A DNA stretch of 64,000 bases from Orbicella franksi (GCA_964199315.1 OZ116707.1:22878001-22942000), one strand, 5' to 3'; shown: positions 19,001 to 53,200, counted from the stretch's first letter. A program made the numbers and translations. Notes: generated by a model from the letters alone, not told the origin.

Positions 19001-21909
19001 CGTAAGAGACTGGTTATTTGATGGTGATACCTTTTTCACTGCCTGCCTCATTCCGCCCTTGTCACTAAAAATCTCCTTGTTTGCAAGTGCCAATGCTCTA
19101 TCAATGTATGTAAATCCTCTTTGGTGTCTTATTTTGTCAACAAATTTGTGGAGCCCTGGCGCGTTAAGTTTGTCCCCTATCAGAGTGTTGAATCGGTAAT
19201 CCACCACTGGCCTTGTTGAATAGGACACGGAGGCGATATGGGTTCCCTTGGGAGAGACATCAAATGCGTCAATTGCCTCCTTGATGAAAGCCTTTAGCAA
19301 TCTCCAGTTACGACCACTAATGCTTCCAGAAGAATCGATCACAAACGCCAAGTCCACGATAGCTTTGCACGCTTCTTCTATAAATAAAGGATAAAGGGAA
19401 TGCAAACTCAACTTAAACTTACATCCTTAAAACATGGTCTAGCTAGAAGACATTAACATGTCATTAAATGCTTTGACAGTTTAAGTTTCATTTTAACTAA
19501 GCTAAGACAAAGAGCTACACTAAAATAGGGTGACATGAATTGTTGTACATTTGGCAACAGGGAAGGGGGGGGGGGGGCAAGCGCTGTACATTTGCAGGCA
19601 TGTACGTAAATGGACCCTCTCTAGTAGAACTGGATAAGGAACAATTTGGACTTTGTTGCTAAACAACTGAAGACCTTTTATCTTAATTGGGAGAGTTTTA
19701 TAGCGTCAGTGTGCTCTTACAGATTCTAAGTTAAATTGGTTACATAAGTTGACATGCCTTCAATGTCCGGTTCGACACAAACTCGTCCACAGGACTGTTG
19801 ACAACATTTCATGTCGCCGTCACAATCATGGTCAATGGAGCACTCGTGGCTGGGCTCGACACAGGTGGATGTGTCATCAGATGGAACAGGACATGTGCCC
19901 TTCTTGGCTGAAATTAGCAAAAAAAAGCTCAACTGTACAACACTACTGCAGTCAAACATTTCTAATACGGATGTGAGCAACATGCAAAAGTGTCGTTATT
20001 ACGAAGTGTGCGTATTATAGAGGTCAGGATATGATGCCATTGTAAATCGCTTAACGGTATAAAGGTTCTATCACAACAAAACCGTCCCAAGCAGATGTTT
20101 GACGCCATTTCGCGATTTTCATGACAAAAGGGTGAAATTCACTGTGTTTAACAAACAAAATTGAACAAGGTTTGACCGTGGTTCGTTCTGTTGTAAACCG
20201 TGCAAGGAATGAAGGAAGGCACGAAACAAGGGAAGTGAGCAACACGTACCGCGGGCCAGGGTTTGCTCGTCACAGGAACGTGTGTGTGATTAAACTGTTA
20301 CAAATTTCCCTCCTCCCCTGCACACCCCGAAGAGAAAATATTAAGTTTTCGAGTTCCATACCAAACGTGCGTTACTTGAACCAAATTTATTAAATGACGT
20401 TTGCATCATTACAGTACAACTAACATTTTATTATAAAAATTTTAAGAAATACCCCCTCCCTGCCCTGGGGATGATGCAAATTTTTTTGGCATCATCTTAA
20501 AACCAGTAACAAGCGCGCCTTTCTCAAGCCGTATTTCGATGTACATCATATATAGAACGCTATTATCTAATGTCATCTAACCTGGTAAAACAGGGTTTAC
20601 ACACTCTTTTCTACAACTCCCAGGACAGCACTCCACTGAGCAGCACCTTGTTCCAGATAGACAGTCATCATTTGTTAAACATTCATAGCTAGAGCTGCGT
20701 CGTATACAGGAGGAGGACTTTATGGGAGCAGGACATACTCTGTAGTCTGGAACTTCTGTTTTTTTAATACAGATATGAAAGAGAAAAGGTGTTACTGTTG
20801 ATTTGTAGTCTTTAAAAAAGGTACCTAGCCTGTTTGCACATATTTTTGCACTCTTATTTACTGTGTGTATATTGGCTACTAAGTCATATTGAACTTCTTT
20901 GTCTTTAAGACTGAATATTAGAAACAGGGATACAGAACACATTATCCAGTCGAAGGGCTACTCCTGGGCGCATTTTGAACGCCGGGCCAAGGACAGAGGA
21001 GACTGGAGGAGTTTTGTCAGTGGTCTCTATGCTCCGAAATGGAGTAGACAGAATTCAGATCAGATCAGATTAGAAACAAACTCTTGTAGAACAGTTTGAC
21101 ATTAATGCTTCTACGTGTTTCAAATATCCTAATAGACAAGGATGGCGATGTCACAAGAAAGTGATTTGCGAGTCTGCTTGATTTATGAATGAAACAAGTG
21201 ACAAAATCAATATAGATTTTCCTTTATCTTCTTATCTCTATTCATTATAGATTAGCAAGATGAATGATGCATAAAGAATATTCGGAATTCACTAGCTGCC
21301 GATCCCTGTAAGTAAGGTTACTAAAGCCTTACCTTTCCGTTTGCACACAGATTCACACTTCTCTTTGTTGAGAAAGTTGTTCGAATTCCCTTCGCAGCCA
21401 CTGTACACAAATGGAAGGCATTCTCCAAGGTTGCTGTCAAAATGCCATCTAATTTTGAAACTTGAACAATTTCCATCTGCGCGAGGCTCGTCACAGAAGT
21501 CGGCTGCTGTGGGAATGGCTGTCAAGAGTGTCAGGACATTACATGTGAAGGAAAGATGAAAGATGATTCTTTAAACATGTTGGCAAGTTCGTTAGTGGAG
21601 TATTAATTAGTTGTTGCTAGTTTGTAAAAAGACGGTCAGTCTGTTGATCAAAGTAAATAATGACAAAAAAAAAATTTAATCAAAAAGGTTAATTCAAATT
21701 TAATCAAGAGCTGAATAAAACCTTAAGCAACTTTTGGTACGTTCACTTTTGTCATATTCATGCTTTTGTCAAGTTCGCGCCAACTTGAACATGGTTAATG
21801 CGGCCTCTTGGCTTGAAATGAATTTAATTCTAAAATTACTTAGAAGGGAAATGTTGCTTTCAGAACAGCAATAACAACAACAATAACAAATAATAATAAT
21901 AATAATAAT

Positions 21910-21942
<33 letters not shown>

Positions 21943-24900: not shown

Positions 24901-27900
24901 CACGAGTCTGAATCTGTAAGACAACCCATAAGTGAAATCTTTATTTATTATTTTTACACTATTTTAGGGTGGTCCGTAGAGGGGGTCCGTAGGGGTAGTC
25001 CATGGACAGGTCCGTAGGGTAGTCCGCGGACCCGGTCCGTTGTCGGGGTCCGTGGACCGGGGATCAGTGTTTTGGGGTTACCCGTTCGCGAGGTCATGGG
25101 TTCGATTCCTGTCGGGGATTCAGAATTTTTCTTTGTCCCACGCTCGTGTCATGTTGATTAATTCACCTTCAAATTTCATTACCGAGCTTAAAATTCACCA
25201 TCTTTACTAACTTATCACTACTCACGATGACTTCGATAGCGTTGATCCTAGCAGTATGCAGGACACCTGTCATATGTAGGTCATGGGTTCGATTCCTGTT
25301 GGGGACTCAGAATTTTTCTTTGTCCCACGCTCGTGTCACGTTGATGGTAATTCACCTTCACATTCCGATAAAAATATTTTGTGTAAATCTACTATTCGTT
25401 AAAAACTTTATCTAAATCCTGTTCAAAGACACTTCGATAGGGCAAAGAAGCGGCCGCCAGTTTGTTAACCGCACACTGCTGTGCTTCTCACTGTCTACAA
25501 CAGAGTAGACATTGAGTCAGTAGTGTAGCCATTAATCAGAGAACAGCATTCGTGATAGAACACTTGCACCACAAGTGGACGTTTGGGAGAACAAAGCTCC
25601 GTGTACTCCGTGTAGTTTTTTCGAGTGATTCTAAAACAGCAAGATAGGAACCTGAAGAAGGTGCTTTCTATTTTGACAGCTCTGTCAAAAGACACTCTTT
25701 TTTTCCCTTTTAGTTTTTGGTATAGTTGAATACTTGTTTTGTAGGCGAGAGTTTGATTTTGCTTTGGATTTTTTTTAATCAGGACTCCTTATGTCTTTTA
25801 TGAGAGATGATCAGGTATAATAGTAAATATTACAACTTTATTTAACTGTTCTTTTTTCCAGGTTCAAAAAACCGGGCGGGTTGACAATGGACACCCCAAA
25901 GTAATAATCTAGGAAATCCACCATTCCACGTTTCAAGCGTGTGGTATGTCCGGAGAAAATTGCTACGAACATCATTTCCGTGGAAAATGAAGTGACTGCA
26001 AGAATCTCCCGTAAAAAGCGACGGTTTTCAAACCCTACCTTCTTTTTAATCTGAATATCGTCGAAATCAGAGAACTTGCATAAATCGTGCTGTAATTCGT
26101 TACCTTTATGTGAAGGTATTCTTGTCGTACAGTAGGTACCACAAGTGTGCAGGCAACATTGGCTCTGTCCAGGACAGTCCTTGTCCGAGGTGCACTTTGG
26201 CCCCTGTGCAGGACATGTAAGTGTTCGCCACCATTTACACGAGCGAGGTAGATTCGATTCACCAATCAATGCACCGTCAGGAGGGTTGTAAAAGAGACCT
26301 ACGAGTAAAAGCGTTACATATCAGTCCTGAGAAATATTTCAAATATTTCATTTGTTTCAATATAAATAATGCAAGGCGTGAATTGTGATGGCGTAAACGA
26401 GTGTGACTATTGTACTTTGGGCTTATGTGTAACCACTACTACTGTACTGTCGTCGCATTTTGTCCGTGTTCAATAGTGATACCTTTGAATCTCACGACGT
26501 CTACCTCATTCTGAACTGTAATTAGCCGAGGATGTAGGCTCTTTGGAGTACCCAGCACGTGACCAGGTCATTCATAAGTGACCAAGTCAATCATAAGAAT
26601 AGGTCACGGAAGAAAAACTAAAGTTATGGTGGTTTAGAAGCTTTTTAACGAAAATTTCCAAACGGCAAAGACATAGCTTGGCATTCAGCAAACAATTTTC
26701 TTACAATCGCGGATCTTTTAAGCCTTGAAGCACAATAATAATTCACATGTACTCATGAATGTATTCCGTGACAAATTTTCCATGATATCAATATTTATGT
26801 TCTCATTACTTTTGTTTGTTCCTATTACAGTTGACAGGTAATTGAAACCCTCCATTTGACCCCTTAAAAATATGCATAGTCGGTCTAGACCACCAACACA
26901 GTATAACAACGATTTTCAACCTGAGGTCTTTAAGATATTGGGTTTCCGCCCTCACACGACCCGTACCAAAATCTGCAATTTATAACCTTAGGCGAGACGA
27001 GAAGTCGTGCAACTCCGAGCCTTTGTCATGAGAGTTCCCCTCCCCCTGGTAAAAAGCATGTCAAGACCAAAACTGTCTGATTTCTATACCCAATCCCAGA
27101 CTAAACTGCCTGAAAACCATACTCTTCACAGCGGCACATACCTATATAGCTTATTTATGATGTACCCCCAGGTGTTAACTTGGAGATTTACGTAGTGAAT
27201 CTCTGACACCTTGTGCTTAGTACATGGTTTACTACACTAAGAACTTTGACCAGAACAAGTAAGATTCCTTAGCGTACTGGTCACTTCAAGTTATTAACTG
27301 ATCTGACTGACTGATGGAAAGGAAGGAATTTGACAAGGAGGGAACACATGACAGCCTAATGAACACCAAAATGTAAACAGGGTCATTCCATTGAATTACT
27401 CAGGTATCGAATGTGATCGATAACCCATAATAGCTGCCCAGGGTTAGACAGTAATCTTTTAAATGGTGTTAAAATTTCCTTTTTTCCTATTGGTTGATAA
27501 TATTGGTTATCTAGTTGTTTTATCTTGCGAAACGTATTGCATTTTAAAGGACACCAAAAGACAAAATTTTAACATTTCCAATAAATAACCTACTAAATTT
27601 CGCTTTTCATTTCCCAATTAATTGTTGGCCAACATAACAACCATTCACACCTCAGGAGCTCTCAGAGAGGAATTTTGTTAGCATCTAAGACTTTTTAAGG
27701 TGATTTTTTTAAGTAAAAGGTTATGGGAGAGATTTCTATTTTTAGTACAGAAAAGGCATATTTCGTGATCTGTTGCGGACCCGGTTACTTTTATTTTTGA
27801 AAATTTTCTATCTCTAAATCATTCATGACGATGCACTGATCTCGATCTCAACAAGAATTTCACTAATGCGTCACACTCATAGTGTAAACATTTTTGAGAC

Positions 27901-28956: not shown

Positions 28957-30706
28957 ACATGACAGAGGAAGAGGAATTAATTTTCCCTTGTTTCCGACCG
29001 TAAACGAAAACTATGTTGCTTTGCACAACATGACCCAGACAGAAGAGATCATCGTATACAAGTAAACAACAGCGCATTTATAGCGGCAACTGTTTCATAT
29101 AGCGCTTTAACTCATTCCTTCATTATCTTCAGCCGTAATTTTAAATTAATTTGAGTCGATGTGCTACCTCACCTTCACAGTTGTCGCATTAAGTTGATAA
29201 CAGACGCATGCCTCAAAAATTAAAGTGACTTTTGGTGCAATGCCAGACAACGAAATGACGAGAAGCAAACAGGGTGTGTTAAGTCTGCAAGCAATTAATA
29301 TAAAAAATCCTGCTAGTTCGTATATAATGACAGCATAGCGATCGTTTCACACGGTATTTTTAACTTAAAGGTCGCTTTTTGTCCGAAGTTATTTGCAACC
29401 TCATCATGTCTATAGCGGCTCCCTCGTGTGATAAGTATTTATTACCAACGGAAACGGTTTTAGCAAACATGTAGAGTTTCTTCTTCTATCATCATGTATT
29501 TATAAAATTGCGTGCAAAAGAGAAGCTGAAACGAACACACATCTGGAACGGAAAGGTCACGCGATAGCAAAAGACATATTCAACTTTTTGACGGGAGGTA
29601 TAAGTTTTAAAAACGACTGTCGAATCGAATCCCTCTCGATTTGCCCACCAACACGTTCAAACGGCAACTGTATAACACCCAGCCAGCCAACATCTGTGAA
29701 ATAAATCCTCTCCATTTTATTGGTCTCAGTAGACAAATGTAAACATTATTTTTTAACTTGGCGTGTTTTCTTTTGGGATCCTAGCAAATTGTTTTTCAAC
29801 AGATCAAAGTAAAATGCTACAAATAAAGGAGAATGAGGGATGGAGCGATAAATTCATATTGTAGGGTCGGAAATAACCGACGTTGCTTTTTTCGATTGAC
29901 TTCATGCTATACAGTGGCCCAAAGGTGTTTCCACGGAAAAATCTAAAAATTGCACGTTCCGATAAAGATCTTTTCTTTTATTCGAACGTTCACGTAATCC
30001 AGCCTTATTTTCGATCAAGCTACTCAGAAACAGAGATCCAAAAAAGGAAAAGAAAAAAGGGAAAGGAACGTCGACCTTTTAGATTTGTGTTTGCTTCCGA
30101 TATCTCCAGAAGAACATTCTGAACGCCTTTTGAAATTCGCAGAATGCGCGTATACGTCACGCAATAACACAAGAATGAACAACTGCCTTCATTATGCAAT
30201 AAACGTTCTTTTAACGATAAATGACAATTCTGTCCACGTCTACTAATCAAGATGAAATATTCCATATAGAGCTGTATTTTTTTCCTCGTTTAAATCCCAT
30301 TGAACACGCTGTGTTCGAATCTGACCCGTCACGAGCATGCGAATTGACAACCACGCGTATTAATCTTTAAATCCTGTGCGGGAGTGCTTTGTCGATGAAT
30401 CTGGACACTGTATCTCTTTACAATCCAATCTCACAAATTGAAGTAAACATAACGAGAGAATGCTCCTGTCTGCGCTATTGTATCAAACCATCTATATGTA
30501 CAAGTTAAAAGTTTGGTGCACGAAAAGTGAACAACAAAAGCAAGAACACAACGTTTCCTATCACACTGCCACAGCTTTGTCAGCAAGATCACTCACTGCA
30601 TGTGTGTGTATTCCCGGCATTAAAATGAACCAACTAGTTCTATAGAAGTACCTGAAACCGCGTGAAAGAGCGCGTAACACAGAAGTATCGCCACCAAATC
30701 CCTCAT
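1..30706 (-). CDS. Gene A (multi-exon, 3' end beyond position 1): giant secreted mosaic protein SP-WAP-FS/Kazal-Ig-Kunitz-WAP-WAP-VWA-TYx6-VWAx7-TYx3-VWA...
   Basis: 34 exons spliced manually, about 8,130 coding nt. All acceptors are AG, and donors are GT except two GC. The frame is continuous across all junctions. Domains were recognised from Cys patterns and VWA motifs. Confidence 0.9.
468..814 (-). CDS. Gene A exon 33: VWA9 N-terminal half (GKRPLDVGIVLDQTLA...GERRID...DAKK)
   Basis: Acceptor TTCTTCGGTAG, donor AAG|GTATGG, 347 nt, phase 1-0. Confidence 0.9.
941..1144 (-). CDS. Gene A exon 32: TY9 thyroglobulin type-1 domain
   Basis: TPCEKQ...PRCRPDGSF...QCANQECFCVD...GKPNC; 204 nt, phase 1-1. 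Confidence 0.92.
1520..1717 (-). CDS. Gene A exon 31: TY8
   Basis: QCKSLTKECWCVD...YLRCP; 198 nt, phase 1-1. Confidence 0.92.
2047..2265 (-). CDS. Gene A exon 30: TY7
   Basis: QCDMSYCYCVD...GRPVCDET; 219 nt, phase 1-1. Confidence 0.92.
2420..2715 (+). mobile_element. tRNA-derived SINE (full length) with 14-bp target-site duplication
   Basis: tRNA-like head (GGTGGCCTCATGGTTAG A-box; GGGTTCGAGCCC B-box) and a CORE/Meta-like central block TTGGGCAAGACACTTTACTCTCACAGTGCCTCTCTCC. TAAATGCCATAAGA is repeated at 2406-2419 and 2716-2729. Confidence 0.88.
2914..3130 (-). CDS. Gene A exon 29: VWA8 C-terminal half
   Basis: VLMLFTSGRWPSQYRDSW...IEIYAVGIG; 217 nt, phase 0-1. Confidence 0.9.
3455..3530. 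repeat. (TAAA)n microsatellite
   Basis: Direct reading of the TAAA/TGAA run in a gene A intron. Confidence 0.9.
3601..3929 (-). CDS. Gene A exon 28: VWA8 N-terminal half
   Basis: RPVDWAYVVDSSDS...RVGLITYS...GRRIDLAL; 329 nt, phase 1-0. Confidence 0.9.
4320..4557 (-). CDS. Gene A exon 27: VWA7 C-terminal half
   Basis: VVVVLTASPW...IQIYSAGFG; donor AG|GTGGAG; 238 nt, phase 0-1. Confidence 0.85.
5151..5473 (-). CDS. Gene A exon 26: VWA7 N-terminal half
   Basis: IDIGFVVDSSNS...FGMITYG; 323 nt, phase 1-0. Confidence 0.9.
5805..6024 (-). CDS. Gene A exon 25: VWA6 C-terminal half
   Basis: VLVVFAAGSWPSQYSQDW...VDIYGYGI; donor A|GTGAGT; 220 nt, phase 0-1. Confidence 0.88.
6387..6721 (-). CDS. Gene A exon 24: VWA6 N-terminal half
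   Basis: MDLGILVDSSSA...HVGIVYFA...DRRID; 335 nt, phase 1-0. Confidence 0.9.
7059..7299 (-). CDS. Gene A exon 23: VWA5 C-terminal half (GC donor)
   Basis: ILIVMSGGPW...VEVYSVGVG; donor AG|GCAAGT is needed to keep phase 1; 241 nt. Confidence 0.85.
7667..8001 (-). CDS. Gene A exon 22: VWA5 N-terminal half
   Basis: VDIAFVADSSSS...HVGFISYG; 335 nt, phase 1-0. Confidence 0.9.
8348..8582 (-). CDS. Gene A exon 21: VWA4 C-terminal half (not in the ORF track)
   Basis: Manual translation VLVLVTGGDWDPQYQSQW...VDVYSFSVG; 235 nt, phase 0-1. Confidence 0.88.
8909..9243 (-). CDS. Gene A exon 20: VWA4 N-terminal half
   Basis: LDLGFVVDSSDS...RVGFVSFS...QRRVD; 335 nt, phase 1-0. Confidence 0.9.
9549..9786 (-). 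CDS. Gene A exon 19: VWA3 C-terminal half
   Basis: ILIVLSGGSWNPYYRPAW; 238 nt, phase 0-1. Confidence 0.88.
10078..10397 (-). CDS. Gene A exon 18: VWA3 N-terminal half
   Basis: YPVDLGFAMDSSIP...RVGAIVFG...QRID; 320 nt, phase 1-0. Confidence 0.9.
10441..11261 (-). mobile_element. 5'-truncated Penelope-like retroelement (GIY-YIG endonuclease C-terminus plus terminal repeat)
   Basis: ORF 10737-11186 has [28 protein letters not shown], the PLE-type GIY-YIG with CxxC. There is a ~42-bp inverted repeat (10451-10492 vs 11170-11210) and a 16-bp direct repeat CATTTAAGTCTAGTTC at 10441 and 11246. Confidence 0.88.
10508..10553 (-). ncRNA. Minimal type I hammerhead ribozyme motif in the PLE terminal repeat
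   Basis: Minus strand reads UUGACU-CUGAAGA-U-GAC(13-nt loop)GUC-GAAAC-GUC^AGUCA: conserved core, stem I UGACU/AGUCA, stem II GAC/GUC, and a loopless palindromic ACGU stem III. Confidence 0.78.
11252..11617. mobile_element. MITE-like element with GTCT(A/G)GTTCACAC termini, containing a short LINE-type 3' tail
   Basis: GTCTAGTTCACAC on the left and GTGTGAACCAGAC on the right (12/13 match). The internal minus-strand TGTAAAGCGCC...GGCGCTATATAAAT(TATT)n resembles an L2/CR1 3' end (about 11277-11345). Confidence 0.5.
11683..11899 (-). CDS. Gene A exon 17: VWA2 C-terminal half
   Basis: ILLIIVASPQ...VQMYSVGAG; 217 nt, phase 0-1. Confidence 0.88.
12359..12711 (-). CDS. Gene A exon 16: VWA2 N-terminal half
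   Basis: PLDFGFLVDSSSD...RVGVVSYA...DRRID; 353 nt, phase 1-0. Confidence 0.9.
12741..13059. repeat. Interspersed repeat with an internal hairpin (probable non-autonomous DNA transposon)
   Basis: Palindrome CCCGAGCGGGCAAGAT-AGCTCC-ATCTTGCCCGCTCGGG at 12960-12997; intronic and GC-richer than its flanks. Confidence 0.6.
13421..13618 (-). CDS. Gene A exon 15: TY6
   Basis: KPCQQ...QCDRQYCWCVE...VTCPP; 198 nt, phase 1-1. Confidence 0.92.
13743..13952 (-). CDS. Gene A exon 14: TY5
   Basis: PWCRADGSY...QCYRSHCYCVN...GKPKCTYT; 210 nt, phase 1-1. Confidence 0.92.
14084..14284 (-). CDS. Gene A exon 13: TY4 (not in the ORF track)
   Basis: Manual translation LLTPCQQK...RCRKDGSYEEVQCQKNGIFCWCVDENG...IRCP; 201 nt, phase 1-1. 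Confidence 0.9.
14346..14522. repeat. Long near-perfect palindrome (foldback/MITE-like)
   Basis: TGGTAAACGCCATAGCGTGCACTATTGAGTTATGGA... pairs with ...TCCATAACTCAATAGTGCACGTTATGGCGTTTACCA; ~85-nt arms. Confidence 0.8.
14875..15080 (+). repeat. GGCCGAAGGCC hairpin repeat family, copy 1
   Basis: Matches the reverse complement of 39000-39226 and partly 23917-24004; central hairpin TGAGGTGATAG...CTATCACCTCA. Confidence 0.75.
15483..15698 (-). CDS. Gene A exon 12: TY3
   Basis: Manual translation TDCQKRY...PWCKPDGGY...QCYGSYCFCVD...GTPKC; 216 nt, phase 1-1. Confidence 0.9.
16098..16457. mobile_element. MITE with CCCGGGGGGTACTCCC termini and a 9-bp TSD
   Basis: TIRs at 16098-16113 and 16443-16457; GGTCAAAAT duplicated at 16089-16097 and 16458-16466. 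Confidence 0.82.
16725..16928 (-). CDS. Gene A exon 11: TY2
   Basis: Manual translation KLTPCQE...QCGGTSGQCWCVDKDG...LQCP; 204 nt, phase 1-1. Confidence 0.9.
17221..17430 (-). CDS. Gene A exon 10: TY1 (not in the ORF track)
   Basis: Manual translation TKCQRQ...PRCKLDGSF...QCRGSVCYCVD...GKPTC; 210 nt, phase 1-1. Confidence 0.9.
17655..17901 (-). CDS. Gene A exon 9: VWA1 C-terminal half (ITDG, MIDAS Asp intact)
   Basis: VCFVITDGAQT...VDVWSIGVG...AACE; 247 nt, phase 0-1. Confidence 0.92.
17982..18121. other. Assembly gap (140 N) in a gene A intron
   Basis: Run of N. The flanking VWA1 half-exons join in frame, so no exon needs to be hidden in the gap. Confidence 0.99.
19031..19377 (-). CDS. 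Gene A exon 8: VWA1 N-terminal half (DSSGS and T, MIDAS intact)
   Basis: EACKAIVDLAFVIDSSGS...GFTYIDRAL; 347 nt, phase 1-0. Confidence 0.93.
19758..19907 (-). CDS. Gene A exon 7: WAP3 four-disulfide core (GC donor)
   Basis: KKGTCP...C...C..DHDCDGDMKCCQQSCGRVC; 150 nt; donor AAG|GCATGT. Confidence 0.9.
20582..20755 (-). CDS. Gene A exon 6: WAP2-like domain (10 Cys)
   Basis: VCP...C...ECLTNDDCLSGTRCCSVECCPGSCRKECVNP; 174 nt, phase 1-1. Confidence 0.85.
20927..21068 (+). mobile_element. Highly 5'-truncated RTE-like LINE 3' end
   Basis: GYSWAHFERRAKDRGDWRSFVSGL resembles the RTE ORF C-terminus; (CAGAT)n tail; ATTAGAAACA duplicated at 20917-20926 and 21069-21078. Confidence 0.7.
21333..21518 (-). 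CDS. Gene A exon 5: Kunitz/BPTI domain (P1 Ser)
   Basis: FCDEPRADGNCSSFKIRWHF...CLPFVYSGCEGNSNNF...CESVC; 186 nt, phase 1-1. Confidence 0.93.
21865..21960. repeat. (AAT)n/(AAC)n compound microsatellite
   Basis: Direct reading. Confidence 0.9.
22118..22393 (-). CDS. Gene A exon 4: Ig (I-set-like) domain
   Basis: ISCRIEG...YRW...LTI...DDAGTYLCVA; 276 nt, phase 1-1. Confidence 0.92.
23098..23337. mobile_element. MITE with TAGACTG...CAGTCTA termini
   Basis: Imperfect ~25-bp TIRs (TAGACTGCGAGCAGATTCTCTTTTG / CAAAAGGGAGACTGCTTACAGTCTA). Confidence 0.72.
23506..23775 (-). CDS. Gene A exon 3: follistatin-N/Kazal domain plus Pro/Thr linker
   Basis: PCVGITCGHGEVC...CACPPRC...VCGTDGITYKSYCELMRTAC...GRC; 270 nt, phase 1-1. 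Confidence 0.93.
24030..25360. mobile_element. Cluster of tRNA-derived SINE-like units (one minus copy, tandem plus copies)
   Basis: Minus copy 24030-24201 has A-box TAGCTCAGTGG and B-box GGTTCGATTCC. Plus copies lie at 24202-24290 and 25084-25360. Confidence 0.75.
24289..25083. mobile_element. Non-autonomous DNA transposon with long GC-rich TIRs, inserted in a SINE-like unit
   Basis: GTAACCCGAAAACACTGACCCC... vs ...GATCAGTGTTTTGGGGTTAC; subterminal GGTCCG repeats. Confidence 0.75.
26104..26298 (-). CDS. Gene A exon 2: WAP1 domain
   Basis: RSCKWWRTLTCPAQGPKCTSDKDCPGQSQCCLHTCGTYC (8 Cys); 195 nt, phase 1-1. Confidence 0.9.
30652..30706 (-). CDS. Gene A exon 1: signal peptide MRDLVAILLCYALFHAVS(G) (not in the ORF track)
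   Basis: CAAAG-ATG context, hydrophobic core, small residues at the cleavage site; donor CAG|GTACTT in phase 1 joins the WAP1 exon in frame. Confidence 0.78.
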
Positions 30707-31825
30707 CTTTGAGACATGAAAATCCATCATCCACAATTTAGACCAATCATCTCTTGGAGGGTCGGTCGCGAACTGCACCGTCGAACAAACAAGAAAGGAG
30801 TTTTATTGACGGCTTTTTTTGCCTAAGATCAGATTTCAATTTGACACCTTAAGTTAAAGGGGAAACATGTGACACGAAAAGTGCGAGGGATAGACCATTT
30901 TTCTTTTCGGTCCTAGCACGCTATGCACACCATAATGCATGCATGTACATGGACTACATTTCCAAACACCCACCAGTAACACCTTTCCGTGAGAGAAGTT
31001 GCTAGTTTGAGCTCTTGAACGAACTGAAGAGAGAAGCTGAGATGTTCCCCTAGGGGCCTAAAGGATTGGACATTGACCCCCGTCCATAACCCCATCTTTC
31101 CTCAAGACGTTCCCACTAATTTTTAAATTCCCCTTTCCTCAGGGGTTAAAGATTCAATCAACACGGGGGCGATCGTTGCAACATCATACCAAAGTTAGTT
31201 GGAAAGTGTGCAGGCTCGCCAGCGAAGGGTATTTTTAATTTGTGTGGTAACGAATGAAGGTTCACAGGCATTGTGCGACACTGAGACATTGAGAACTTTT
31301 TACGACACTGAATTTGAAATCATCTTTAGCAGAATGATAGTCTATGTTCTAACCAATAAAGTTCTACGAAAGTGTCTGTGCCAATACAGTGATTGTACTG
31401 TGAAAGTATGCACAATTTTAATTAGCGGAAGTCACGTTCTCAGCTCGATCGCATTACAGTGCCCGTGGAGCCCAGTGGCACCACCGATAACTTAGTAGAT
31501 AACCTATCCTGTCTTAAAACCAGTCTGCATTCTTCGTTCGTAAAGAAATGTGCATACTAAGGCCATCTCTACACGAAGAATCTATCATCTGCTGTTTTAA
31601 ATCTTGTCGGCAAGTAGTTTACTGTGAGAAAGTGGGTGTTAATATGGACTCCAAACAAAAGACTGTCAGGCGTCCAGGCGACTGCTTGATGCATTCTTGG
31701 AGATATCTTGAAGTGACACTTTTTTACAGCGCGACCTCACGTGATAACCTCTCAAAATCCTGACACAGATCTTCCCCCTCGAAAATGCCATTTAAAACCA
31801 AAAGTTCATAATAATTATAAACTGC

Positions 31826-31867
<42 letters not shown>

Positions 31868-33796
31868 ACATCTCGTAATTCAACTCTCGCGAAATGGTTT
31901 TCATTTGCAGCGGCATGTCTTGAACTTCAACTATGGGCTCCTTGCTTTGGATTCTCACAAATGCGTCTTTAGTGTCTTAGTGAGATCGTGCTGGCGCGGG
32001 AAGCTTACCGTATATCACTGATATCAACTTTGACACCGTGAGAGGTATCGCGACTTAAGCTGTTTTGCAATCACTTGGAACACAAGGGTTGCTGTTTTGT
32101 AAAGACCGTTCGAACTGTTGACAGAAATTCCATGAGAGCAACTTTCATCAGGAAAGACATCAGTTACAAGGACACAGTGAACGAACAATAACCAAATTAT
32201 AAATTAATAGAGCGATTGTGTTTTAACGAGATGCAGAAGTCTGGCCTGACAGTATCAAGAAGGCGGGACGAGGGTGTGGGAGGGGCGAGGGCTGAAACGA
32301 TCAGAGATCCGATTTGCTGATCAAAGTTACAAAGAAGGTTTCAAAAATAGGCACAAACGGCTAGTTATTTTCTTTTTCTTTGTACCGATTACTGTTTTGA
32401 TCACATTATTTTACTTGACCTGGGTGGCTGATTTAGGATTTAATGTAACACGAGCAATAATTTTTTTTTAATTTATATAGCTTGTAAACAAGATTAAAAT
32501 GCCATAATATATAAAATGCACAGCACGAACAAATGAAATCGGATCTACAGCTTGAGTTATGTAATCTTTATGTCTGCTTTTTGTCAAAGATTCTGATAAT
32601 TTTTTTCCCAAAGGACAAGCGCAACAAAACGTAAAAAAGAGTTCCTACTGTGAGGCTACCTGTATTCAAGAACGAGAGTCGGGGGTACTCTGCAAGGCAA
32701 CAAATGTAATCACGTTCAGCCATCCGTAATACAGAGGATGTCATTATTGTAATCTGTCGATTGCAGGAGTCGTCACTTGACGGAGTGAGATACGTTGTTT
32801 CTTAGAAAGATGATGATCTTTTCACGACGCATGGTACATTGTCAGCATATTTGAGATGGAAATTTTTTCATCCAAATCAGATGTTTCGGATCAGGAGATG
32901 TCCGAATAAGGTATTCAACTGGTCCTCTAACTAGGACAAAGTCGAATCATTCCCTTATTTTCCTGGCAATCTGGAATTTTGATTTAGCTTTAATAAAAAC
33001 TTTATGGACCTTTATTCACCATATGGAGCCGCCTTTTCGATAATCACGCTATGTTCAGCATTCCTGGTACCTAAAACACCCTGCAGTAACAAGCAAACAG
33101 ACAAACAAACAAACAGACAAATAGACAACCGTACAGACAACACGAATGAACAGTATGTATGCTCAGAGATGAATAATATTACACCCAGCTCAAATTCCAA
33201 TATCGTTCTCAGAGGTTTTCTTTTCTGGTTCTTTATTTGCCACAGGTTTTTACTGAGCAAGACACCGTGGTCAATGAATTGGCCATTGCTCCGTCTTTAC
33301 TGCAAGGATCCGTAAGGAACAGTCTGTGTAGTATCCAGGCCTACTTAAGATTTTGGAAACGTGAGAAAATGAGGCGTTTCACTGGATATATGATAAGCAG
33401 CCAGTTTAACCTCTCTCATTGCATGTGGTCTATTTTATCTGAGCAAATAGACTTATAACATAATACTCATTTCCTATTTACCGGAGGAACACAATGTACC
33501 TTGTAAACAGAGGTGTTGAGTTCACATATTTTCAAGTAATTAGCAACGTAATAATTGATCTAGTTTGTTGATAAAGATCACGCCACCATACCACATACAG
33601 TCAGCATGCAAGCATGCATGGCATTGGATAAACAGGCAAAACTATTGTACTGCGACAGGGGTCTCTTTATGCACCCCCCTCATCCCCCGTGCTCGTGTAT
33701 TTTGCTTCCTATAGTCCCAACGCTTCGAGTAAGACCTCGAGAAGCCTCTCGTTTTTCTTAGTCCAAAAACGACCTTCGCGCCGCCATGCATAAGAT

Positions 33797-47200: not shown

Positions 47201-50200
47201 GTAATAATAATAATGTGTCTTGCCATAGAAACAACAAAATATGACGCGATCGAACCCAGATTCCCAGATCCATCTTAACAGTGGAACACCGCTTGTGTCA
47301 CTGTAAGGAGGGTTACTTTCGTTGTTGAGGACATTCTGTTGGGAGACTGTATTGTTGATTGCAGCGTCGATTTAAGCGGACAGCGTGGAACGTTAGCCGG
47401 AGTCATAGAGCTGCGCTCTTGTGCATTTTAATGCCCTTAAAAGTCACTTCACTCTTACAGTACCTTGGTCCGCGCTGGTGTCTAAATAAGTGCTAGGGGT
47501 AAACCTGCGATTGAGTAGCATCACATAATAGACGAGTAAAAATACTCCTAGTGCCACCATGCTAAGGAAAGGCACGCGCTGGCCTGATGGACCTGTATGT
47601 TCGAAATCAAAGGGTTGAACGATTCGGAGGGGAGTGGAGGTGGGGGTGGGGGAGAGGGGAAGGGTTGAAGTTAAGTACATAGCCTATCTGCTAATAATGT
47701 GGAGCCCGTTAAAGATTTTAATTTTATCGTAGGTAACAGGCTGAGGACTGCCCGTCGCTACAGGAGACAAGCTGTGAAGGAAGGCCGGTGCCCCTCTTGG
47801 AGCGTCATCAGGAACTGTTCTTCGCTTGAACAATGCAATTGGGATGGCGACTGTTCCGGTACTCAGAAATGCTGCAGGAGCACATGTGAGACACGCACCT
47901 GCTACGAACCCATTTTGGCAATAGGACCTGGCGAAGGTAAGTTTTCAGGCCAAAGAAAATAGATTGTAAGAGATTACCCTGTTGTGCGAAATTGTTAAGA
48001 GTTAATTCGTAAAAAAGAGAGGATTAACGGTAGTAGAGCCAATCCACCAAATAGGCCTTATTTGCAAGTTAATCCCCCTTACGTTATTTTTTAGTCATTG
48101 TATTTGAGGTATTCCGCGGATAATGTTAACACTGACTTGGTTCCGTGGATGTTTTCGTGGAGGATGGAAATACGTGCAAACCCTCTCGGGTTGTCAAACT
48201 GAGCAAATTTGCTTCACAGGATTGGCTGTGTGTAGGCCTTCCTGGGATTTCCAAAACTGGGACTGATTTAAAAACTATAGTACATTTTGGAGGCATTACC
48301 TTGAGAGTAAGGCCTATAGAAGGGAAATTTCTCTTGTGCTTCATTTTCTCTTGCACCTAATTATTTAGAATCAGCTTGAACCTTTGAAAAAGGTCCGTTT
48401 GTTACATTGATACATTGCATTTGATCCACAGACTGCAAAACAAATATAAGTTCGATGCGATCATGGTTGAAGTTTGTTTCCGGCTACCTTAACTTTTTGC
48501 TACAGATGTTATTGCTATATCTACGAGTATTAAATCGGTGAGCAAGTGCGAGTTGATGGACGAAGCCAATCTCCGAGATCGGACTGTGTCTGCAGTTTTC
48601 GTCTCGATATTGTGTAGCAACTCATCGAACCATGATAGCATGTCCATGAGGACGCTTGCTGTATTGTAGAGTGTTCGCACTTCTGATTTGATAATTAGGC
48701 GAAGATTTTTCACAAGTCAAGAGTCATAGTGTCTCTATATTTGTATAAGTTGCTTGCTTTCTTGATCTTATTCTTGTCGTACTCGACGTTAATTACAAAG
48801 TAGTTGTTGCATTTGTTTCAGATGCGTGCCCAATAGACGAAGTCGCATTGAATAAAGATAGTTCAAATTGTCTTCCTGGAAGAACTAGATTTTGCTTTAA
48901 AAGCAACTGCAAAAGGTAGTTTTCGCTATTGTTGCATTCCTCAGACGAGTTATATAATTTGTTTGACTAACGAGACTGTAGGTGATCTAGTTTAACCTCA
49001 TCTAAGAAATGGCGAATTGAGTCACCATCGCAAAACTATAATTGAGGAGAGGGGGAGCTTCATTACACGACACCCTCTGATAATAATCACCCTTCCCCCA
49101 TGCACTCCGTAGATAAGCCATTAAAGTTACATTTACCGTTAGCTCCATAGGCATAACGTGCTGTATGTTTCACAAGCTTGAGATTCCCCAAAGTTGTTGT
49201 TTTGTCTCTATGACGTTATTTTAAGATTTTGTAATGACCAGTTGCTGTGCATTATTTCATACCAAATTGACGACGAAAAATGCTTTCCAAATCTAATCGT
49301 AACCATTTCTGAAAAAGCAAACTTCGTTTCGTAGCTATTTGTGTTTGTTCTGTTATTTTAGATGCTGTTACCACTATAACACGTGCAACCCTAATCCGGA
49401 ACTTCTTATGTCCAGGGACGAATGTCGAAGAGGTAAATTGTGTAGATCATTCTCTCTTAAGTAAGTAATAAAACACCCTTGTACTCCTGGCTTCGGTAAC
49501 TATTCTATTTGTGTTTGATTGGAAGATATAGCCGTTTTTTGTTCTTTAATGTTAATTGCTTTGCTAGTCCATTTTCTGGTTGTTCCCAGGTTGCTCTGTT
49601 CGCTTGATATAAGCACATGTTCATCGCTTATTGTCTGATCAAATTGTTTTGGTTATTTTTATAACGTGGCCCTGTAATATACTGTAGACAACAACAAGGG
49701 CAAGTTTCATCTGAAGCAGGTGGACTGAGATTTAAAAAGTGCAAACACAGCTGTTTATAGTATTTTTAATGTCAAATACTTTTTCTGTTGCACAGTGCTT
49801 TGTTCTCCAAGGGTATGCAAGTTTCCAGGGGAAGTTTGCGTTTTGGACAAATATAACTCTCCCAGATGCTCCTGCCTGTCAAAGTGCCCTACGCCACAGC
49901 CGGAGGAAAAAGTTTGCGGGACTGATGGTATTCCCTACAACAGCGCTTGTGAATTAAACAGAACAGCTTGTATTTTGGGAATAACTGATATCAAGATTCA
50001 TAACAATGGAGGTTGCAAGCCAAGTAAGTAGATCGACGTATCGTTATTCACTAAATTGTTGCAGTTCTGCTGCTGGATTAGCTCACACAGGCCGATTATC
50101 AGTGGTTAAACCCGTAGGCCGGTCAAAATACGAAAAACACAAATACATCACAAACTTACTTTTCCTGAAGATCAGAAAACCGACGCAATCACGCTCTAAA

Positions 50201-53200
50201 GAAATTTCAGAATGACAGCTGGTCTTGAGAGGAAGTTGTGGGAAGTATCTTTTCGAATCACAAATTTGTTTCTCTTGCTTTCATTCCATTCCAAGATCAG
50301 TGGGTACCGCGCCCACTTTGTTTTGGCGCTTTTTTATACATTCGCTTCATTTAGATCGATCTGAAACCTTTACATAATCTAATTAATATATAAAGTATAA
50401 ATTTCAATGAATGAATGCTAATTATAGTAAATTGTTTACCTCAAAGATTATTCCATTCGCGTGTAGTTTTTGCTCTTGCTTCATATTTTGGTAAAGCGTT
50501 TGCAACAGGCTCTCTCAATGAGCTCTTACGAGTTAGAAATTAATTTGTTCTTATTAACTTTTTTGTTGCATGTAGGCCAATGATTAGATTATTATTTCAT
50601 AACAAAATACTTGAACATGAGCAAGGATAGTTTTGACCTTGTTTAAAATGATTACATTAAGATGGAGTGAAGATTGAAGTCAGTACAGCCCACAAGAGCA
50701 AACAAATTCTGCCAGCCTACAAACAAGGTGAACTCACGTGCCGTTTTGAGGGAGACCCTGTGAGTATCACGTGGAGAAAGGTTGGACTTCGTACTTTGCC
50801 AAATCGAATGATTCCTCGTATGGACAAGCTAGATATTCTGGATGTCGATATGCGCGACAGTGGAATGTACAAATGCAAGGCTTATGACGGATTCTCCACA
50901 GCGGAGGCGGAAATAAATGTTACTATTAACGGTAAGAGTTAAAACATTTAAATAAACACAATAGTCTTTTTTCTTTGGTTTAATGTAACGTGGCTCAATA
51001 GGGTAATGATTTATCGCGTTCCGCGCGCTAGTGTTATGTTTTGAAAGTTGTTTTTGGATTCGTTTTAACACCAAGTCCTCTCAAACTTATTAAATGTAAT
51101 AAGCAATGATTATATATTGATTTACCATCATCTCTATTAAAATCTTGGATTTTAATCTTGAATTATAAATGCCCAAGCAAATGCATTTTCTACTGTTTTT
51201 ATGGCTTTATTTGTCATTTCCTTGAACTTCCTTCGCTGAATTCTTCCAAAAATTTTACAGCACATTAAATCCGGCGGGATACGAATTTCAAAAACGAAAA
51301 ACAAACAAACAAACAAACAGACAGACAGAAACATAAAGTACCTTGCATCATGTCTTAGTTCCTGTAACCTTGGTTTACATAATGTGTACAACTTAAATGT
51401 TTGCGTCACTCGCAGGACCATCTTCTCCCAGTATTGGAAATAACACGTCTCGCACAGATTGTCTACAACCTCGAAGTACTGGGTACTGTAGAAGATACAT
51501 CGTTCGCTGGTACTTTGATGGTGAAGGTGGTGTCTGCAGACCATTTGTATACGGTGGCTGTGGTGGAAACAAAAATAATTTCCAGACTCAATTAGAGTGT
51601 AGCTCTTCTTGCAGTTATGCAGGTATTTCGCACTTGCAACTTCGTCTAGCAAATCTATCTGGCGTAATCAGGCGTTTACATGGTGACGGGCATACTAAGG
51701 AAATACGACCTCTTTTTGGTGTTTTCGCCATCTTGGGCTTTAAAACGGCTGAAAGATCCTCGCAACGAGGTCTACCTCGTTCCCAGTGCTTTTTCCTTTC
51801 CCGGTAACGAGATTGCGACGAGGTTGGAATTTTACATCGGAAAACTCAAAGCCCAAGTTGAAACGTTCAGCGCTTTTAAATTGATTTAAATTGTTAAATT
51901 GTTTTAAATTGTTGAAATTGTTTCATTTTATTAGCGTCAATGCACCTAACTGATGAAGAGCGAAAATATTCAGCTCGTTAAATTCCGCTCGTAATTCTTT
52001 TACTTACTTTGCAGCTGGTGACATATGCATTTTGCCAATGATCAAGGGCCCTTGTAAAGGCTTCATGCCGCAATGGTTTTACAATTGGAAGAAAGGACGA
52101 TGTGAACAGTTTATTTATGGCGGGTGCAGCGGTAACGCCAACAGATTTAACACCAAGGCAAAATGTCAACTTCGATGCGTAGGTAAGTGATAAGACAAAC
52201 CCTACAATGAATGTCAATGTTGTCAACGTTTCGCAATTCAGAAATCTCTTTCAAAGCGTTGTTTTATATGTTTTTTTTTTCTTTCCCAGTGGATCCGTCG
52301 GCAAACACTGCATGTTTACGCCAACAGTTCTTAGCCAGGCGTAACAAACGTCTTGGCGTGTTTGTACCAAGATGTCTTCCCGACGGAGGGTATGATAAGG
52401 TTCAGTGTCATGGATCAGTTTGTTTCTGTATGGATGAGGAAGGAGAAGAAGTTCCAGGGACGAGAGTTTATCGAAATCAAGCTCTCGACTGCACGGGAAA
52501 ATTACCACTCCCAACTGGTAACCATTCTCGATTTATGTCTCAATCTTGAGTAGTGTGCTATTTATCTTCACAAAGTTTGTTACATTACCTAACTGACAGG
52601 TAAAGGGAATAAAGAAAATGGTCAACATTGCAATATGTCAGAAATTAAAGGCGTTTGGTTAAACGTTGTTCCACTGTCCCCGTCTTACGATATGGTCAGT
52701 TAGTTCAATTCTTCGTCTGTGTGAGCATGTTTAACTCCTGTACACGTGTAACCAACTGTGCCACAATATAAATGGTTTTACCCCGTTTTGGGCAGAAAAA
52801 TGGCAGCGATCTTGAGTTTTCTCATCTGAGTTCAGCCTCTGTACATTGGGGGAGGAAGGGAGACTTCAGGCACTGGACTATTTCTGCGGCTGTGAAAGTT
52901 GTTGGAGGACATGTTATTTGGTGAGAGGTCAGCCGTGAGACCTGAAACTAATACCATTAATTACGTCAGGGTTTTCTCTAAACTGAAAAATCTGATAGTG
53001 TTTCGGTGGCCATAATTTATACAATATAAATTACCTGAAAAAGCTTGTTAGTCATAACGTAGTTTAAACCTGGTTAATCTACAATGACAGCCTACTTATC
53101 TCGTCACCTTCCATGTTTGAATTAAGAGCAAAAAGTGATTAGAAAGTGATTTAAACAGTGATCATAGCAAGAGGTTAACTGTTTTACTAATTTCTTCATA

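What the first reader, a model, noticed from the sequence alone, without database searches (positions are those of the whole stretch)
21333..51622. Both genes open with the WFIKKN/GASP cassette (WAP-follistatin/Kazal-Ig-Kunitz)
Seen: gene A exons 2-5 (26298-21333) and gene B exons 2-7 (47733-51622) encode this order. Known: chordate WFIKKN1/2 (GASP-2/GASP-1) are WAP-FS/Kazal-Ig-Kunitz-Kunitz-NTR and antagonise myostatin/GDF11 mainly through the follistatin domain. Inference: the cassette may predate the cnidarian-bilaterian split, fused here to TY/VWA arrays instead of Kunitz-NTR. These proteins could then be matrix-tethered TGF-beta/activin/GDF antagonists as well as protease inhibitors.
Basis: partly seen in the sequence, partly recalled or inferred. 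Interest (0 to 1): 0.78.

Follow-up and report, generated by a model that had tools for sequence, protein, structure and literature searches.

The report
WFIKKN-like head on giant coral inhibitors
Two neighbouring stony-coral genes for giant secreted matrix proteins really do begin with the same run of protease-inhibitor-type modules as the vertebrate myostatin-binding protein WFIKKN, but whether this reflects shared ancestry or shared function remains unproven, and a sea-anemone relative was flagged in 2012.

Summary
Gene A (- strand) encodes WAP, follistatin/Kazal (FS), Ig and Kunitz at exactly the stated exon bounds. Gene B (+ strand) encodes WAP, an extra 8-cysteine module, FS, Ig, Kunitz and a second Kunitz. 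All are phase 1-1 exons. RNA contigs join gene B's exons.

Both genes are giant, with more than 50 and at least 24 thyroglobulin type-1 repeats, plus VWA, WAP and Kunitz. Neither has an NTR module.

The head is conserved in other corals (dN/dS 0.21). A third paralogue in this genome reads FS-Ig-Ku-Ku-Ku-WAPx9. A separate gene reads Sushi-FS-Ku-Ku-NTR.

Per-domain comparisons give no specific link to WFIKKN. The FS domains resemble agrin, follistatin and FSTL far more than WFIKKN2's FS domain. The Ig is generic, with papilin among its matches. The Kunitz scores do not discriminate.

Published work partly anticipates the idea. Monestier 2012 called two collinear Nematostella genes probable GASP ancestors. 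A 2025 matrisome study lists mesoglea protein NvThyr-1 with WFIKKN2 as its best hit.

Most likely these are matrix-bound, multi-class protease inhibitors. TGF-beta antagonism is untested speculation.

The other notes on this window (VWA array, 8-cysteine module) are first-reader notes only.

The parts
30652..30730 (-). Gene A candidate exon 1 (Met plus hydrophobic signal-peptide-like stretch, phase-1 GT donor)
   Evidence: Found by a script scan for ATG plus a hydrophobic stretch plus a phase-1 donor. It joins in frame to 26298. No RNA check.
26104..26298 (-). Gene A WAP exon (8 Cys), phase 1-1
   Evidence: Pfam WAP E 7.3e-6. Splice sites. Orthologue L013:7085-7333 is 72% identical, dN/dS 0.24.
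23506..23775 (-). Gene A follistatin-type (FOLN plus Kazal) exon with Pro/Thr-rich linker, phase 1-1
   Evidence: Pfam Kazal_2 1.4e-8. Aligns over the full FS length to agrin, follistatin, FSTL3 and FSTL1. dN/dS 0.25.
22118..22393 (-). Gene A Ig (I-set/C2) exon, phase 1-1
   Evidence: Pfam Ig_3 2.9e-8 and I-set 4.6e-7. Orthologues in other corals are 67-97% identical.
21333..21518 (-). Gene A Kunitz exon, P1 = Ser, phase 1-1
   Evidence: Pfam Kunitz 1.4e-18. dN/dS 0.06 against L013.
20580..20810 (-). Gene A second WAP-like exon (bounds approximate)
   Evidence: Pfam WAP, weak (E 0.005). Conserved in L013:12055-12234 at 83% identity.
19745..19907 (-). Gene A third WAP exon (3' bound approximate)
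   Evidence: Pfam WAP 2e-11. Acceptor at 19907.
927..19426 (-). Gene A body inside the window: 9 thyroglobulin type-1 exons and VWA exons. The gene runs on for more than 39 kb beyond window base 1, with more than 45 further TY exons.
   Evidence: Open-frame and motif scans.
41145..41220 (+). Gene B exon 1 (MMCQLFSLKSFAFLSLLAF..., signal peptide), phase-1 donor GTAAGT
   Evidence: The loose 5' end of an RNA contig that continues from exon 2 matches 41187-41216 with 2 mismatches. Reading frame.
47733..47936 (+). Gene B WAP exon, phase 1-1
   Evidence: Pfam WAP 5.3e-9. RNA joint 47936 to 48822.
48822..49432 (+). Gene B extra 55-residue 8-Cys module on two exons (48822-48915, 49362-49432; phases 1-2 and 2-1)
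   Evidence: RNA joints. Translation. No Pfam match. It interrupts the W-F adjacency.
49796..50023 (+). Gene B follistatin-type (FOLN plus Kazal) exon, phase 1-1
   Evidence: Pfam Kazal_2 6.8e-9. Closest solved domains are in follistatin, agrin, FSTL and SPARC. RNA joints.
50662..50931 (+). Gene B Ig (I-set) exon, phase 1-1
   Evidence: Pfam I-set 6.8e-9. AlphaFold model pLDDT 96. RNA joints.
51416..51622 (+). Gene B Kunitz 1, P1 = Arg, phase 1-1
   Evidence: Pfam Kunitz 3.9e-19. RNA joints.
52015..52182 (+).
   Evidence: Pfam Kunitz 1e-20. RNA joints 51622 to 52015 and 52182 to 52290. Scores 60.6 bits to WFIKKN1 Ku2.
52290..63928 (+). Gene B body inside the window: about 17 thyroglobulin type-1 exons, a VWA exon (62897-63391) and a third Kunitz (63695-63928). 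The gene continues beyond base 64000.
   Evidence: Pfam TY 1.5e-15, VWA 7.7e-6 and Kunitz 2.6e-16. Scans.

Best explanation
Genes A and B are a head-to-head pair of old paralogues. Each encodes a giant secreted extracellular-matrix (mesoglea) mosaic protein.

Architecture:
- A signal peptide.
- A conserved N-terminal head: WAP-FS-Ig-Kunitz in A, and WAP-[8-Cys]-FS-Ig-Kunitz-Kunitz in B.
- Further WAPs.
- Very long arrays of thyroglobulin type-1 repeats, interspersed with VWA and Kunitz modules.

Proposed function: matrix-anchored, multi-class protease inhibitors.
- The Kunitz domains (P1 Arg or Lys in B), and perhaps the WAPs, act against serine proteases.
- The TY repeats act against cysteine or aspartic proteases, equistatin-like.
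- The VWA modules tether the protein in the matrix.

Origin of the head: it is a supra-domain built from phase 1-1 exons and copied as a block within cnidarians. It shares module order with WFIKKN/GASP, but the proteins are not WFIKKN orthologues.

What is shown: domain identities, exon structure, gene B splicing, conservation and selection.
What is inferred: secretion, matrix location (from the Nematostella relatives) and inhibitor activity (from the families).
For: - Domain calls come from Pfam.
- All head exons are phase 1-1.
- Gene B is spliced as predicted in RNA.
- Signal-peptide-like first exons are present.
- More than 50 TY exons are counted for gene A and at least 24 for gene B.
- Orthologues of A, B and C exist in several other coral assemblies. 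The most distant Ig copies are 67-71% identical.
- L013 keeps the order WAP-FS-Ig-Ku-WAP-WAP-VWA-TY.
- dN/dS is 0.06-0.27 across the head exons, with dS 0.67.
- Paralogue C keeps FS-Ig-Ku-Ku-Ku, and its Kunitz domains match gene B's position by position.
- Nematostella NvThyr-1 and NvThyr-2 share one orthogroup. Their best hits are WFIKKN2 and equistatin. They are classed as core matrisome, and they are flagged as significant hits in the study's stage comparisons (PMC12549020 supplementary files 2 and 8). That paper groups thyroglobulin-repeat proteins with the protease inhibitors that increase in adult mesoglea.
- Equistatin, a sea-anemone TY protein, inhibits cysteine and aspartic proteases. 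This is established knowledge, recalled rather than tested here.
Against: - No inhibitor activity has been measured.
- FS-type Kazal domains are usually not protease inhibitors.
- Gene A's Kunitz has P1 Ser.
- Many TY domains in other proteins are not inhibitory.
- Orthology to NvThyr-1/2 is inferred from architecture and a supplementary-table best hit.
Confidence: 0.6

Rival explanations
1. The head is a true homologue of the WFIKKN/GASP W-F-I-K-K core. The arrangement would then have existed before cnidarians and bilaterians split. Bilaterians later added NTR and lost the TY tail, or cnidarians added the tail. Protostomes lost the arrangement or turned it into papilin.
For: - Five modules in the WFIKKN order lie on one RNA-verified transcript of gene B.
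- The FS-Ig-Ku(-Ku) core persists in three old paralogues.
- Nematostella has collinear WAP/FS and Ig-Ku-WAP-WAP gene models. These match gene A's order, and their Ig grouped near the GASP Ig in the authors' tree (PMC3427181).
- WFIKKN2 is the best Swiss-Prot hit of NvThyr-1.
- Gene B Ku2 and gene C Ku2 each score 60.6 bits to WFIKKN1 Ku2, near the top of the single-domain hits.
- Papilin's Ig gives the highest TM-score by query (0.85) among the 30 best matches of the Ig model.
Against: - The FS domains score only 21 bits to WFIKKN2's FS, and much more to the follistatin, FSTL3, FSTL1 and agrin FS domains.
- WFIKKN1/2 are not among the 30 best Foldseek Swiss-Prot matches of the Ig.
- The Kunitz ranking does not discriminate.
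- There is no NTR.
- An extra module separates W and F in gene B.
- The same genome holds Sushi-FS-Ku-Ku-NTR, so these 1-1 modules recombine freely.
- No protostome WFIKKN is known (PMC3427181).
Confidence: 0.4
2. The proteins act as matrix-tethered antagonists of activin/GDF8/11-like or other TGF-beta ligands through the FS domain.
For: - The FS domains are full follistatin-type modules (EGF-like part plus Kazal). They are closest to the ligand-binding FS domains of follistatin and FSTL3.
- The genome encodes at least 20 TGF-beta family ligand exons, two of them with 9 cysteines.
- A myostatin/gdf8/11 gene and follistatin are reported for cnidarians (PMC3169577 text and its reference 33).
Against: - Each protein has one FS domain, without follistatin's N-terminal domain or a second FS domain.
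- Agrin, SPARC and many other FS-bearing matrix proteins are not TGF-beta traps. This is established knowledge.
- There is no sequence affinity to the one FS domain known to bind GDF8/11 alone (WFIKKN2, 21 bits).
- There are no binding data.
Confidence: 0.15
3. The resemblance is convergent. Independent exon shuffling of common phase 1-1 inhibitor and adhesion modules happened to give the same order in cnidarians and deuterostomes.
For: - All modules are phase 1-1 exons.
- Within one genome the same module types occur in many orders: W-F-I-K-W-W-TY, W-x-F-I-K-K-TY, F-I-K-K-K-Wx9 and Sushi-F-K-K-NTR.
- No per-domain affinity to WFIKKN was found.
- Repeated evolution of identical architectures is documented for other NTR-bearing proteins (PMC3516229).
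Against: - Matching four to five modules in a row by chance is unlikely for any single protein.
- The order is stable over long times within cnidarians.
- The published Ig tree placed the Nematostella Ig close to the GASP Ig (PMC3427181).
Confidence: 0.45

Closest known systems
WFIKKN1/WFIKKN2 (GASP-2/GASP-1) of deuterostomes
   Same: The N-terminal module order is WAP, follistatin/Kazal, Ig, Kunitz, and in gene B a second Kunitz. The proteins are secreted. The modules are of protease-inhibitor type.
   Different: - There is no NTR.
- The proteins have thousands of residues, with TY, VWA, WAP and Kunitz arrays, against about 550-650 aa.
- Gene B has an extra 8-Cys module between W and F.
- Gene A has one Kunitz followed by two WAPs.
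- FS sequence similarity to WFIKKN2 is the weakest among the FS-type domains compared.
- No ligand-binding data exist.
Nematostella 'thyroglobin repeat proteins' NvThyr-1 (NV2.14419) and NvThyr-2 (NV2.14040), and the scaffold-86 gene models of Monestier 2012 (4887 aa WAP/FS; 292 aa Ig-Ku-WAP-WAP)
   Same: - These are cnidarian TY-repeat matrix proteins.
- NvThyr-1 is annotated 'WAP', with WFIKKN2 as best Swiss-Prot hit.
- Two paralogues fall in one orthogroup.
- The Ig-Ku-WAP-WAP order is exactly that of gene A after its FS domain.
   Different: Orthology was not tested here, because no Nematostella sequence could be fetched. The 2012 models split the head over two genes. The coral RNA shows gene B's head on one transcript.
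Papilin
   Same: It is a matrix protein that combines Kunitz arrays, Ig domains and, in protostomes, WAP. Its Ig is among the best structural matches of the coral Ig (ranks 4 and 13; TM-score by query 0.85 and 0.82).
   Different: Papilin starts with thrombospondin type-1/ADAMTS-like modules. It has no FS domain and no TY array.
Equistatin and other thyroglobulin type-1 inhibitors; testican/SMOC (FS plus TY)
   Same: TY repeats with the QC...CWCV pattern, here in very long arrays. Testican and SMOC also combine an FS domain with TY.
   Different: Equistatin has three TY domains and nothing else. Testican and SMOC lack WAP, Ig and Kunitz.
Follistatin, FSTL3, agrin
   Same: By sequence these are the closest FS domains. 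Single-domain scores are 29-45 bits to follistatin, FSTL3 and FSTL1, and per-domain scores are 29-36 bits to agrin and follistatin.
   Different: Those proteins carry several FS domains in tandem and different flanking modules.

Membership tests
WFIKKN/GASP | N-terminal WAP domain | tested here: met
   Pfam WAP E 7e-6 for gene A and 5e-9 for gene B.
WFIKKN/GASP | Follistatin/Kazal domain directly after WAP | tested here: inconclusive
   Met in gene A. In gene B a 55-residue 8-Cys module on two RNA-verified exons lies between WAP and FS.
WFIKKN/GASP | Ig (C2/I-set) domain after FS | tested here: met
   Pfam I-set and Ig_3. Model pLDDT 96.
WFIKKN/GASP | Two Kunitz domains after the Ig | tested here: inconclusive
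   Gene B has two (51416-51622 and 52015-52182). Gene A has one, followed by WAP-WAP.
WFIKKN/GASP | C-terminal NTR domain | tested here: not met
   PF01759 has 9 matches in the genome. The nearest on this chromosome lies 2.8 Mb away. After the head both genes continue as TY arrays. The 3' ends of both genes were not reached.
WFIKKN/GASP | Domain sequences group with WFIKKN domains of the same position (orthology) | tested here: inconclusive
   Only similarity rankings could be made, not trees. FS scores 21 bits to WFIKKN2 FS, below every other FS-type chain listed. WFIKKN is not in the Ig's top 30 Foldseek matches. B-Ku2 scores 60.6 bits to WFIKKN1 Ku2, among the top hits but not the best.
WFIKKN/GASP | Binds GDF8/GDF11 through the FS domain | not testable with these tools
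   One in-silico complex job gave no verdict. A binding assay is needed.
Cnidarian thyroglobulin-repeat matrix proteins (NvThyr-1/2 group) | Long TY arrays with a WAP-bearing head that resembles WFIKKN; secreted matrix protein | tested here: met
   The architecture is shown. The Nematostella annotation is in PMC12549020 supplementary file 2. Sequence-level orthology was not tested.
Thyroglobulin type-1 (equistatin-like) inhibitors | TY domain with six Cys and the QC...CWCV core | tested here: met
   Pfam PF00086 E 1.5e-15 for 52211-52546. The motif is present in more than 75 exons across both genes. Inhibitory activity was not tested.
Papilin | N-terminal TSP1/ADAMTS-spacer cassette and C-terminal PLAC | not tested
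   None was seen among the head exons. No systematic search was made.

The most novel reading that the evidence does not exclude
The complete W-F-I-K-K order already existed in one gene in the cnidarian-bilaterian ancestor. That would overturn the published model, in which the Kunitz duplication came after the cnidarian split and the FS domain was added only in early deuterostomes. WFIKKN would then be a trimmed, NTR-capped descendant of a giant matrix inhibitor. The coral proteins would keep an ancestral dual role: protease inhibition plus trapping of TGF-beta-family ligands in the mesoglea.
Probability: 0.12. Interest if true: 0.75.

Novelty: new variant of a known kind. Interest (0 to 1): 0.45.

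Why it matters
WFIKKN/GASP proteins control myostatin and GDF11. Their origin has been placed in early deuterostomes.

A cnidarian transcript carrying WAP, FS, Ig and two Kunitz modules in that order makes the question testable. The same genome offers two paralogues and a separate FS-Ku-Ku-NTR gene for comparison. The question is whether the arrangement is ancient or was assembled twice.

It also gives a concrete, expressible protein head for asking two further things. Do cnidarian matrices trap TGF-beta ligands? What do the giant thyroglobulin-repeat proteins of the mesoglea do?

If the resemblance is convergent, it is still a clean example of repeated evolution of one domain order by exon shuffling.

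Tried and rejected
1. A profile search of 1.84 billion representatives with the Ig exon. The best 150 were giant multi-Ig proteins whose summed scores swamped the list. It gave no useful relatives apart from three exon-sized fragments.

2. Three word-indexed protein searches with Ig alignments. They found only exon-sized open frames from other coral assemblies, in three orthologue groups. They found no anemone, hydrozoan or bilaterian relative, and not the 292-aa Nematostella protein. The length window and the 5-residue word index limit these searches, so the blank says nothing about deeper relatives.

3. ESM Atlas look-alikes of the Ig gave generic Ig clusters only.

4. Foldseek of the Ig model against Swiss-Prot AlphaFold models. 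All matches had similar E-values (2e-6 to 1e-5) and at most 28% identity, so it does not discriminate.

5. Complex prediction with gene A's FS domain and two copies of a 9-cysteine TGF-beta-family mature domain from this genome (L034). The result was no verdict. It is evidence neither for nor against binding. That ligand could not be assigned to the activin or GDF8 class by its PDB hits.

6. The share of gene A's words held in RNA libraries (0.45-0.60) exceeds the exon share of the stretch. These libraries therefore carry intronic or genomic material and do not prove splicing.

7. The second-closest Ig relative in the genome (G000:C4:30283958) lies among Ig exons only, with no cassette.

8. 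The FS-like hit at G000:C1:6524040 is a broken copy of gene A's exon, not a fourth paralogue.

9. True per-domain phylogenies with WFIKKN, papilin and FSTL could not be built. Full-length bilaterian sequences could not be obtained, and long sequences may not be typed in.

Full report
WHAT IS THERE

The window is G000:C10:22878001-22942000 of a stony-coral genome (the organism is named as a coral in earlier notes). It has 40% G+C and one 140-base N run.

| Domain | Gene A (- strand) | E-value | Gene B (+ strand) | E-value |
|---|---|---|---|---|
| WAP | 26298-26104 | 7e-6 | 47733-47936 | 5e-9 |
| Kazal/FS | 23775-23506 | 1e-8 | 49796-50023 | 7e-9 |
| Ig | 22393-22118 | 3e-8 | 50662-50931 | 7e-9 |
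| Kunitz | 21518-21333 | 1e-18 | 51416-51622 | 4e-19 |

The FS exons align over their whole length, EGF-like part plus Kazal part, to follistatin-type domains of solved structures. Each exon has a polypyrimidine-AG acceptor and a GT donor, and all are phase 1-1.

RNA EVIDENCE

I laid RNA contigs and raw poly-A reads on 47400-52600. They show seven GT..AG joints:
- 47936 to 48822
- 48915 to 49362
- 49432 to 49796
- 50023 to 50662
- 50931 to 51416
- 51622 to 52015
- 52182 to 52290

One 1,043-nt contig joins WAP, the two small exons, FS, Ig and Kunitz 1. Another contig joins Kunitz 2 to the first TY exon and runs on into the next TY exon.

The 5' loose end of a contig locates exon 1 at 41145-41220. 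It encodes a Met followed by a hydrophobic signal-peptide-like stretch. Gene A has a comparable candidate first exon at 30730-30652. That exon and gene A's splicing were not checked with reads. The RNA word shares for gene A exceed its exon share, so they prove nothing.

CORRECTIONS TO THE OBSERVATION

- Gene B has a second Kunitz exon right after the first (52015-52182, Pfam 1e-20).
- The 'x' is a 55-residue, 8-cysteine module on two exons between WAP and FS. It has no Pfam match.
- Gene A's single Kunitz is followed by two WAP exons (20.6-20.8 kb, weak; and 19.7-19.9 kb, E 2e-11).

THE GENES ARE GIANT

I fetched the flanks of the window.
- Gene A carries 9 TY exons in the window. More than 45 further TY exons lie in the 39 kb beyond window base 1, together with VWA exons.
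- Gene B carries about 17 TY exons, a VWA and a Kunitz exon in the window. At least 7 more TY exons and a WAP exon lie beyond base 64000.
- Neither 3' end was reached.
- NTR (PF01759) has nine matches in the genome. The nearest on this chromosome lies 2.8 Mb away.

CONSERVATION AND PARALOGY

The Ig profile finds, besides A and B, one clearly related exon 590 kb upstream (E 6.6e-15). This third gene, gene C, reads FS, Ig, a degenerate Kunitz, Kunitz, Kunitz, then nine WAPs in one exon.

Pairwise comparisons show that the Kunitz domains match by position. B-Ku2 is closest to C-Ku2 (54% identity). B-Ku1 is closest to A-Ku and shares 49% identity with C-Ku1. The F-I-K(-K) core was therefore copied as a block.

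Protein searches returned only exon-sized open frames from other coral assemblies. They fall into three orthologue groups:
- A: 67-97% identity
- B: 71-98% identity
- C: 68-99% identity

One such contig, L013, has an Ig 69% identical to gene A's. It keeps the order WAP-FS-Ig-Ku-WAP-WAP-VWA-TY. Against it the six head exons give dN/dS of 0.06-0.27, 0.21 overall, with dS 0.67. A distant gene B orthologue shows WAP, Ig and TY genes in the same order.

IS IT A WFIKKN RELATIVE?

The test available here was similarity ranking, not phylogeny.

FS domains:
- They score only 21 bits to the WFIKKN2 FS domain (6MAA).
- They score 29-45 bits to the single FS domains of FSTL3, FSTL1 and follistatin, and 25-31 bits to SPARC.
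- They score 29-36 bits per domain to agrin and follistatin.
- This agrees with Monestier et al., who found the Nematostella Kazal domains near follistatin and FSTL3, and the GASP Kazal near agrin, tomoregulin and FSTL1/4/5 (PMC3427181).

Ig domain:
- The model is excellent (pLDDT 96), but it matches generic I-set domains.
- Papilin is at ranks 4 and 13. Mouse papilin has the best TM-score by query, 0.85.
- WFIKKN1/2 are not in the top 30.

Kunitz scores to WFIKKN1 Ku2 (2DDI):

| Domain | Bits |
|---|---|
| B-Ku2 | 60.6 |
| C-Ku2 | 60.6 |
| A-Ku | 54.7 |
| C-Ku3 | 49.9 |
| B-Ku1 | under 50.5 |

2DDI is never the best single hit.

A further gene on another chromosome, gene D, reads Sushi (at least five), FS, Kunitz, Kunitz, NTR. 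It holds the F-K-K-N part of WFIKKN. Its FS is agrin-like, and its Ku2 is no closer to WFIKKN than the others. The genome thus holds W-F-I-K-K and F-K-K-N in different genes, and no complete WFIKKN.

This cuts both ways. It shows how freely these phase 1-1 modules recombine, which favours convergence. It also shows that every WFIKKN adjacency exists in a cnidarian.

LITERATURE

Monestier et al. 2012 reported two collinear genes on Nematostella scaffold 86.
- One is a 4887-aa WAP/FS protein.
- The other is a 292-aa protein with Ig, Kunitz and two WAPs.
- The authors called them 'probable ancestors' of GASP.
- They concluded that the Kunitz duplication came later and that FS was added in early deuterostomes.
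- Ig-Ku-WAP-WAP is exactly gene A's order after FS, so those models were probably parts of one gene.

The 2025 Nematostella matrisome study lists the following.
- NvThyr-1 (NV2.14419), annotated 'WAP', has human WFIKKN2 as its best Swiss-Prot hit.
- NvThyr-2 (NV2.14040) has equistatin as its best hit.
- The two share one orthogroup and are classed as core matrisome. They are flagged as significant hits in the study's stage comparisons.
- The study groups thyroglobulin-repeat proteins with the protease inhibitors that increase in adult mesoglea.

I found no paper that describes the full W-F-I-K-K order in a cnidarian transcript. The library searched is incomplete.

FUNCTION

The best-supported reading is a matrix-bound, multi-class protease inhibitor.
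- The Kunitz P1 residues are Arg and Lys in gene B and Ser in gene A.
- There are several WAPs and dozens of TY repeats of the equistatin type.
- The VWA modules would provide anchorage.

The TGF-beta trap idea rests only on three points:
- An FS domain is present.
- Ligands are present: at least 20 TGF-beta family exons in this genome.
- Myostatin/gdf8/11 and follistatin are reported in cnidarians (PMC3169577).

An in-silico complex test gave no verdict.

VERDICT

- A conserved, block-inherited WFIKKN-like head exists in cnidarian giant matrix proteins.
- These proteins are not WFIKKN family members: they lack NTR, have a different size and body, and show no domain-level affinity.
- Common descent of the arrangement gets roughly even odds against convergence.
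- TGF-beta antagonism is a low-probability, testable speculation.

Noticed in passing
G000:C1:6056563-6064362 (- strand; loci L015, L016): A gene with at least five Sushi repeats, then FS/Kazal, Kunitz, Kunitz and NTR. This is the F-K-K-N part of the WFIKKN architecture in a separate coral gene. All domains pass Pfam.
   Followed up: partly
G000:C10:22288090-22300090 (+ strand; L009:7090-7383, L010:148-9086): Third paralogue, gene C: FS, Ig, a degenerate Kunitz lacking cysteines, two intact Kunitz, then nine WAP domains in one 519-codon exon. No WAP exon was seen in the 7 kb upstream. Orthologues in other corals are 68-99% identical.
   Followed up: partly
window 48822-48915 and 49362-49432 (+): A 55-residue 8-cysteine module of gene B on a phase 1-2 / 2-1 exon pair. 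It is RNA-verified and has no Pfam match. Its Cys spacing is loosely WAP-like. It is also the subject of first-reader note s1-229049.
   Followed up: partly
G000:C1:6523989-6524341 (+; L018/L019): A broken copy of gene A's FS exon together with its flanking intron letters. The frame is disrupted after about 60 codons. It looks like a stray segmental copy, not a gene.
   Followed up: partly
window 10740-11198 (-); also L013:14677-15657 and G000:C1:6068188-6069504: Open frames that look like a reverse transcriptase plus a GIY-YIG-type endonuclease, perhaps Penelope-like retroelements, sit inside introns of these genes. I named them by eye and ran no domain search on them.
   Followed up: no
window 63241-63412 (+): A repeat of about 175 bases, with at least 40 copies genome-wide at 82-88% identity. 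Many copies match on both strands, as an element that is partly palindromic would.
   Followed up: no
G000:C10:20967342-21072265: A tandem cluster of at least ten TGF-beta-family ligand exons on the same chromosome, about 1.8 Mb from the window.
   Followed up: no
window 30730-41145: Genes A and B are head to head. Their candidate first exons are about 10.4 kb apart, so they may share a bidirectional control region.
   Followed up: no
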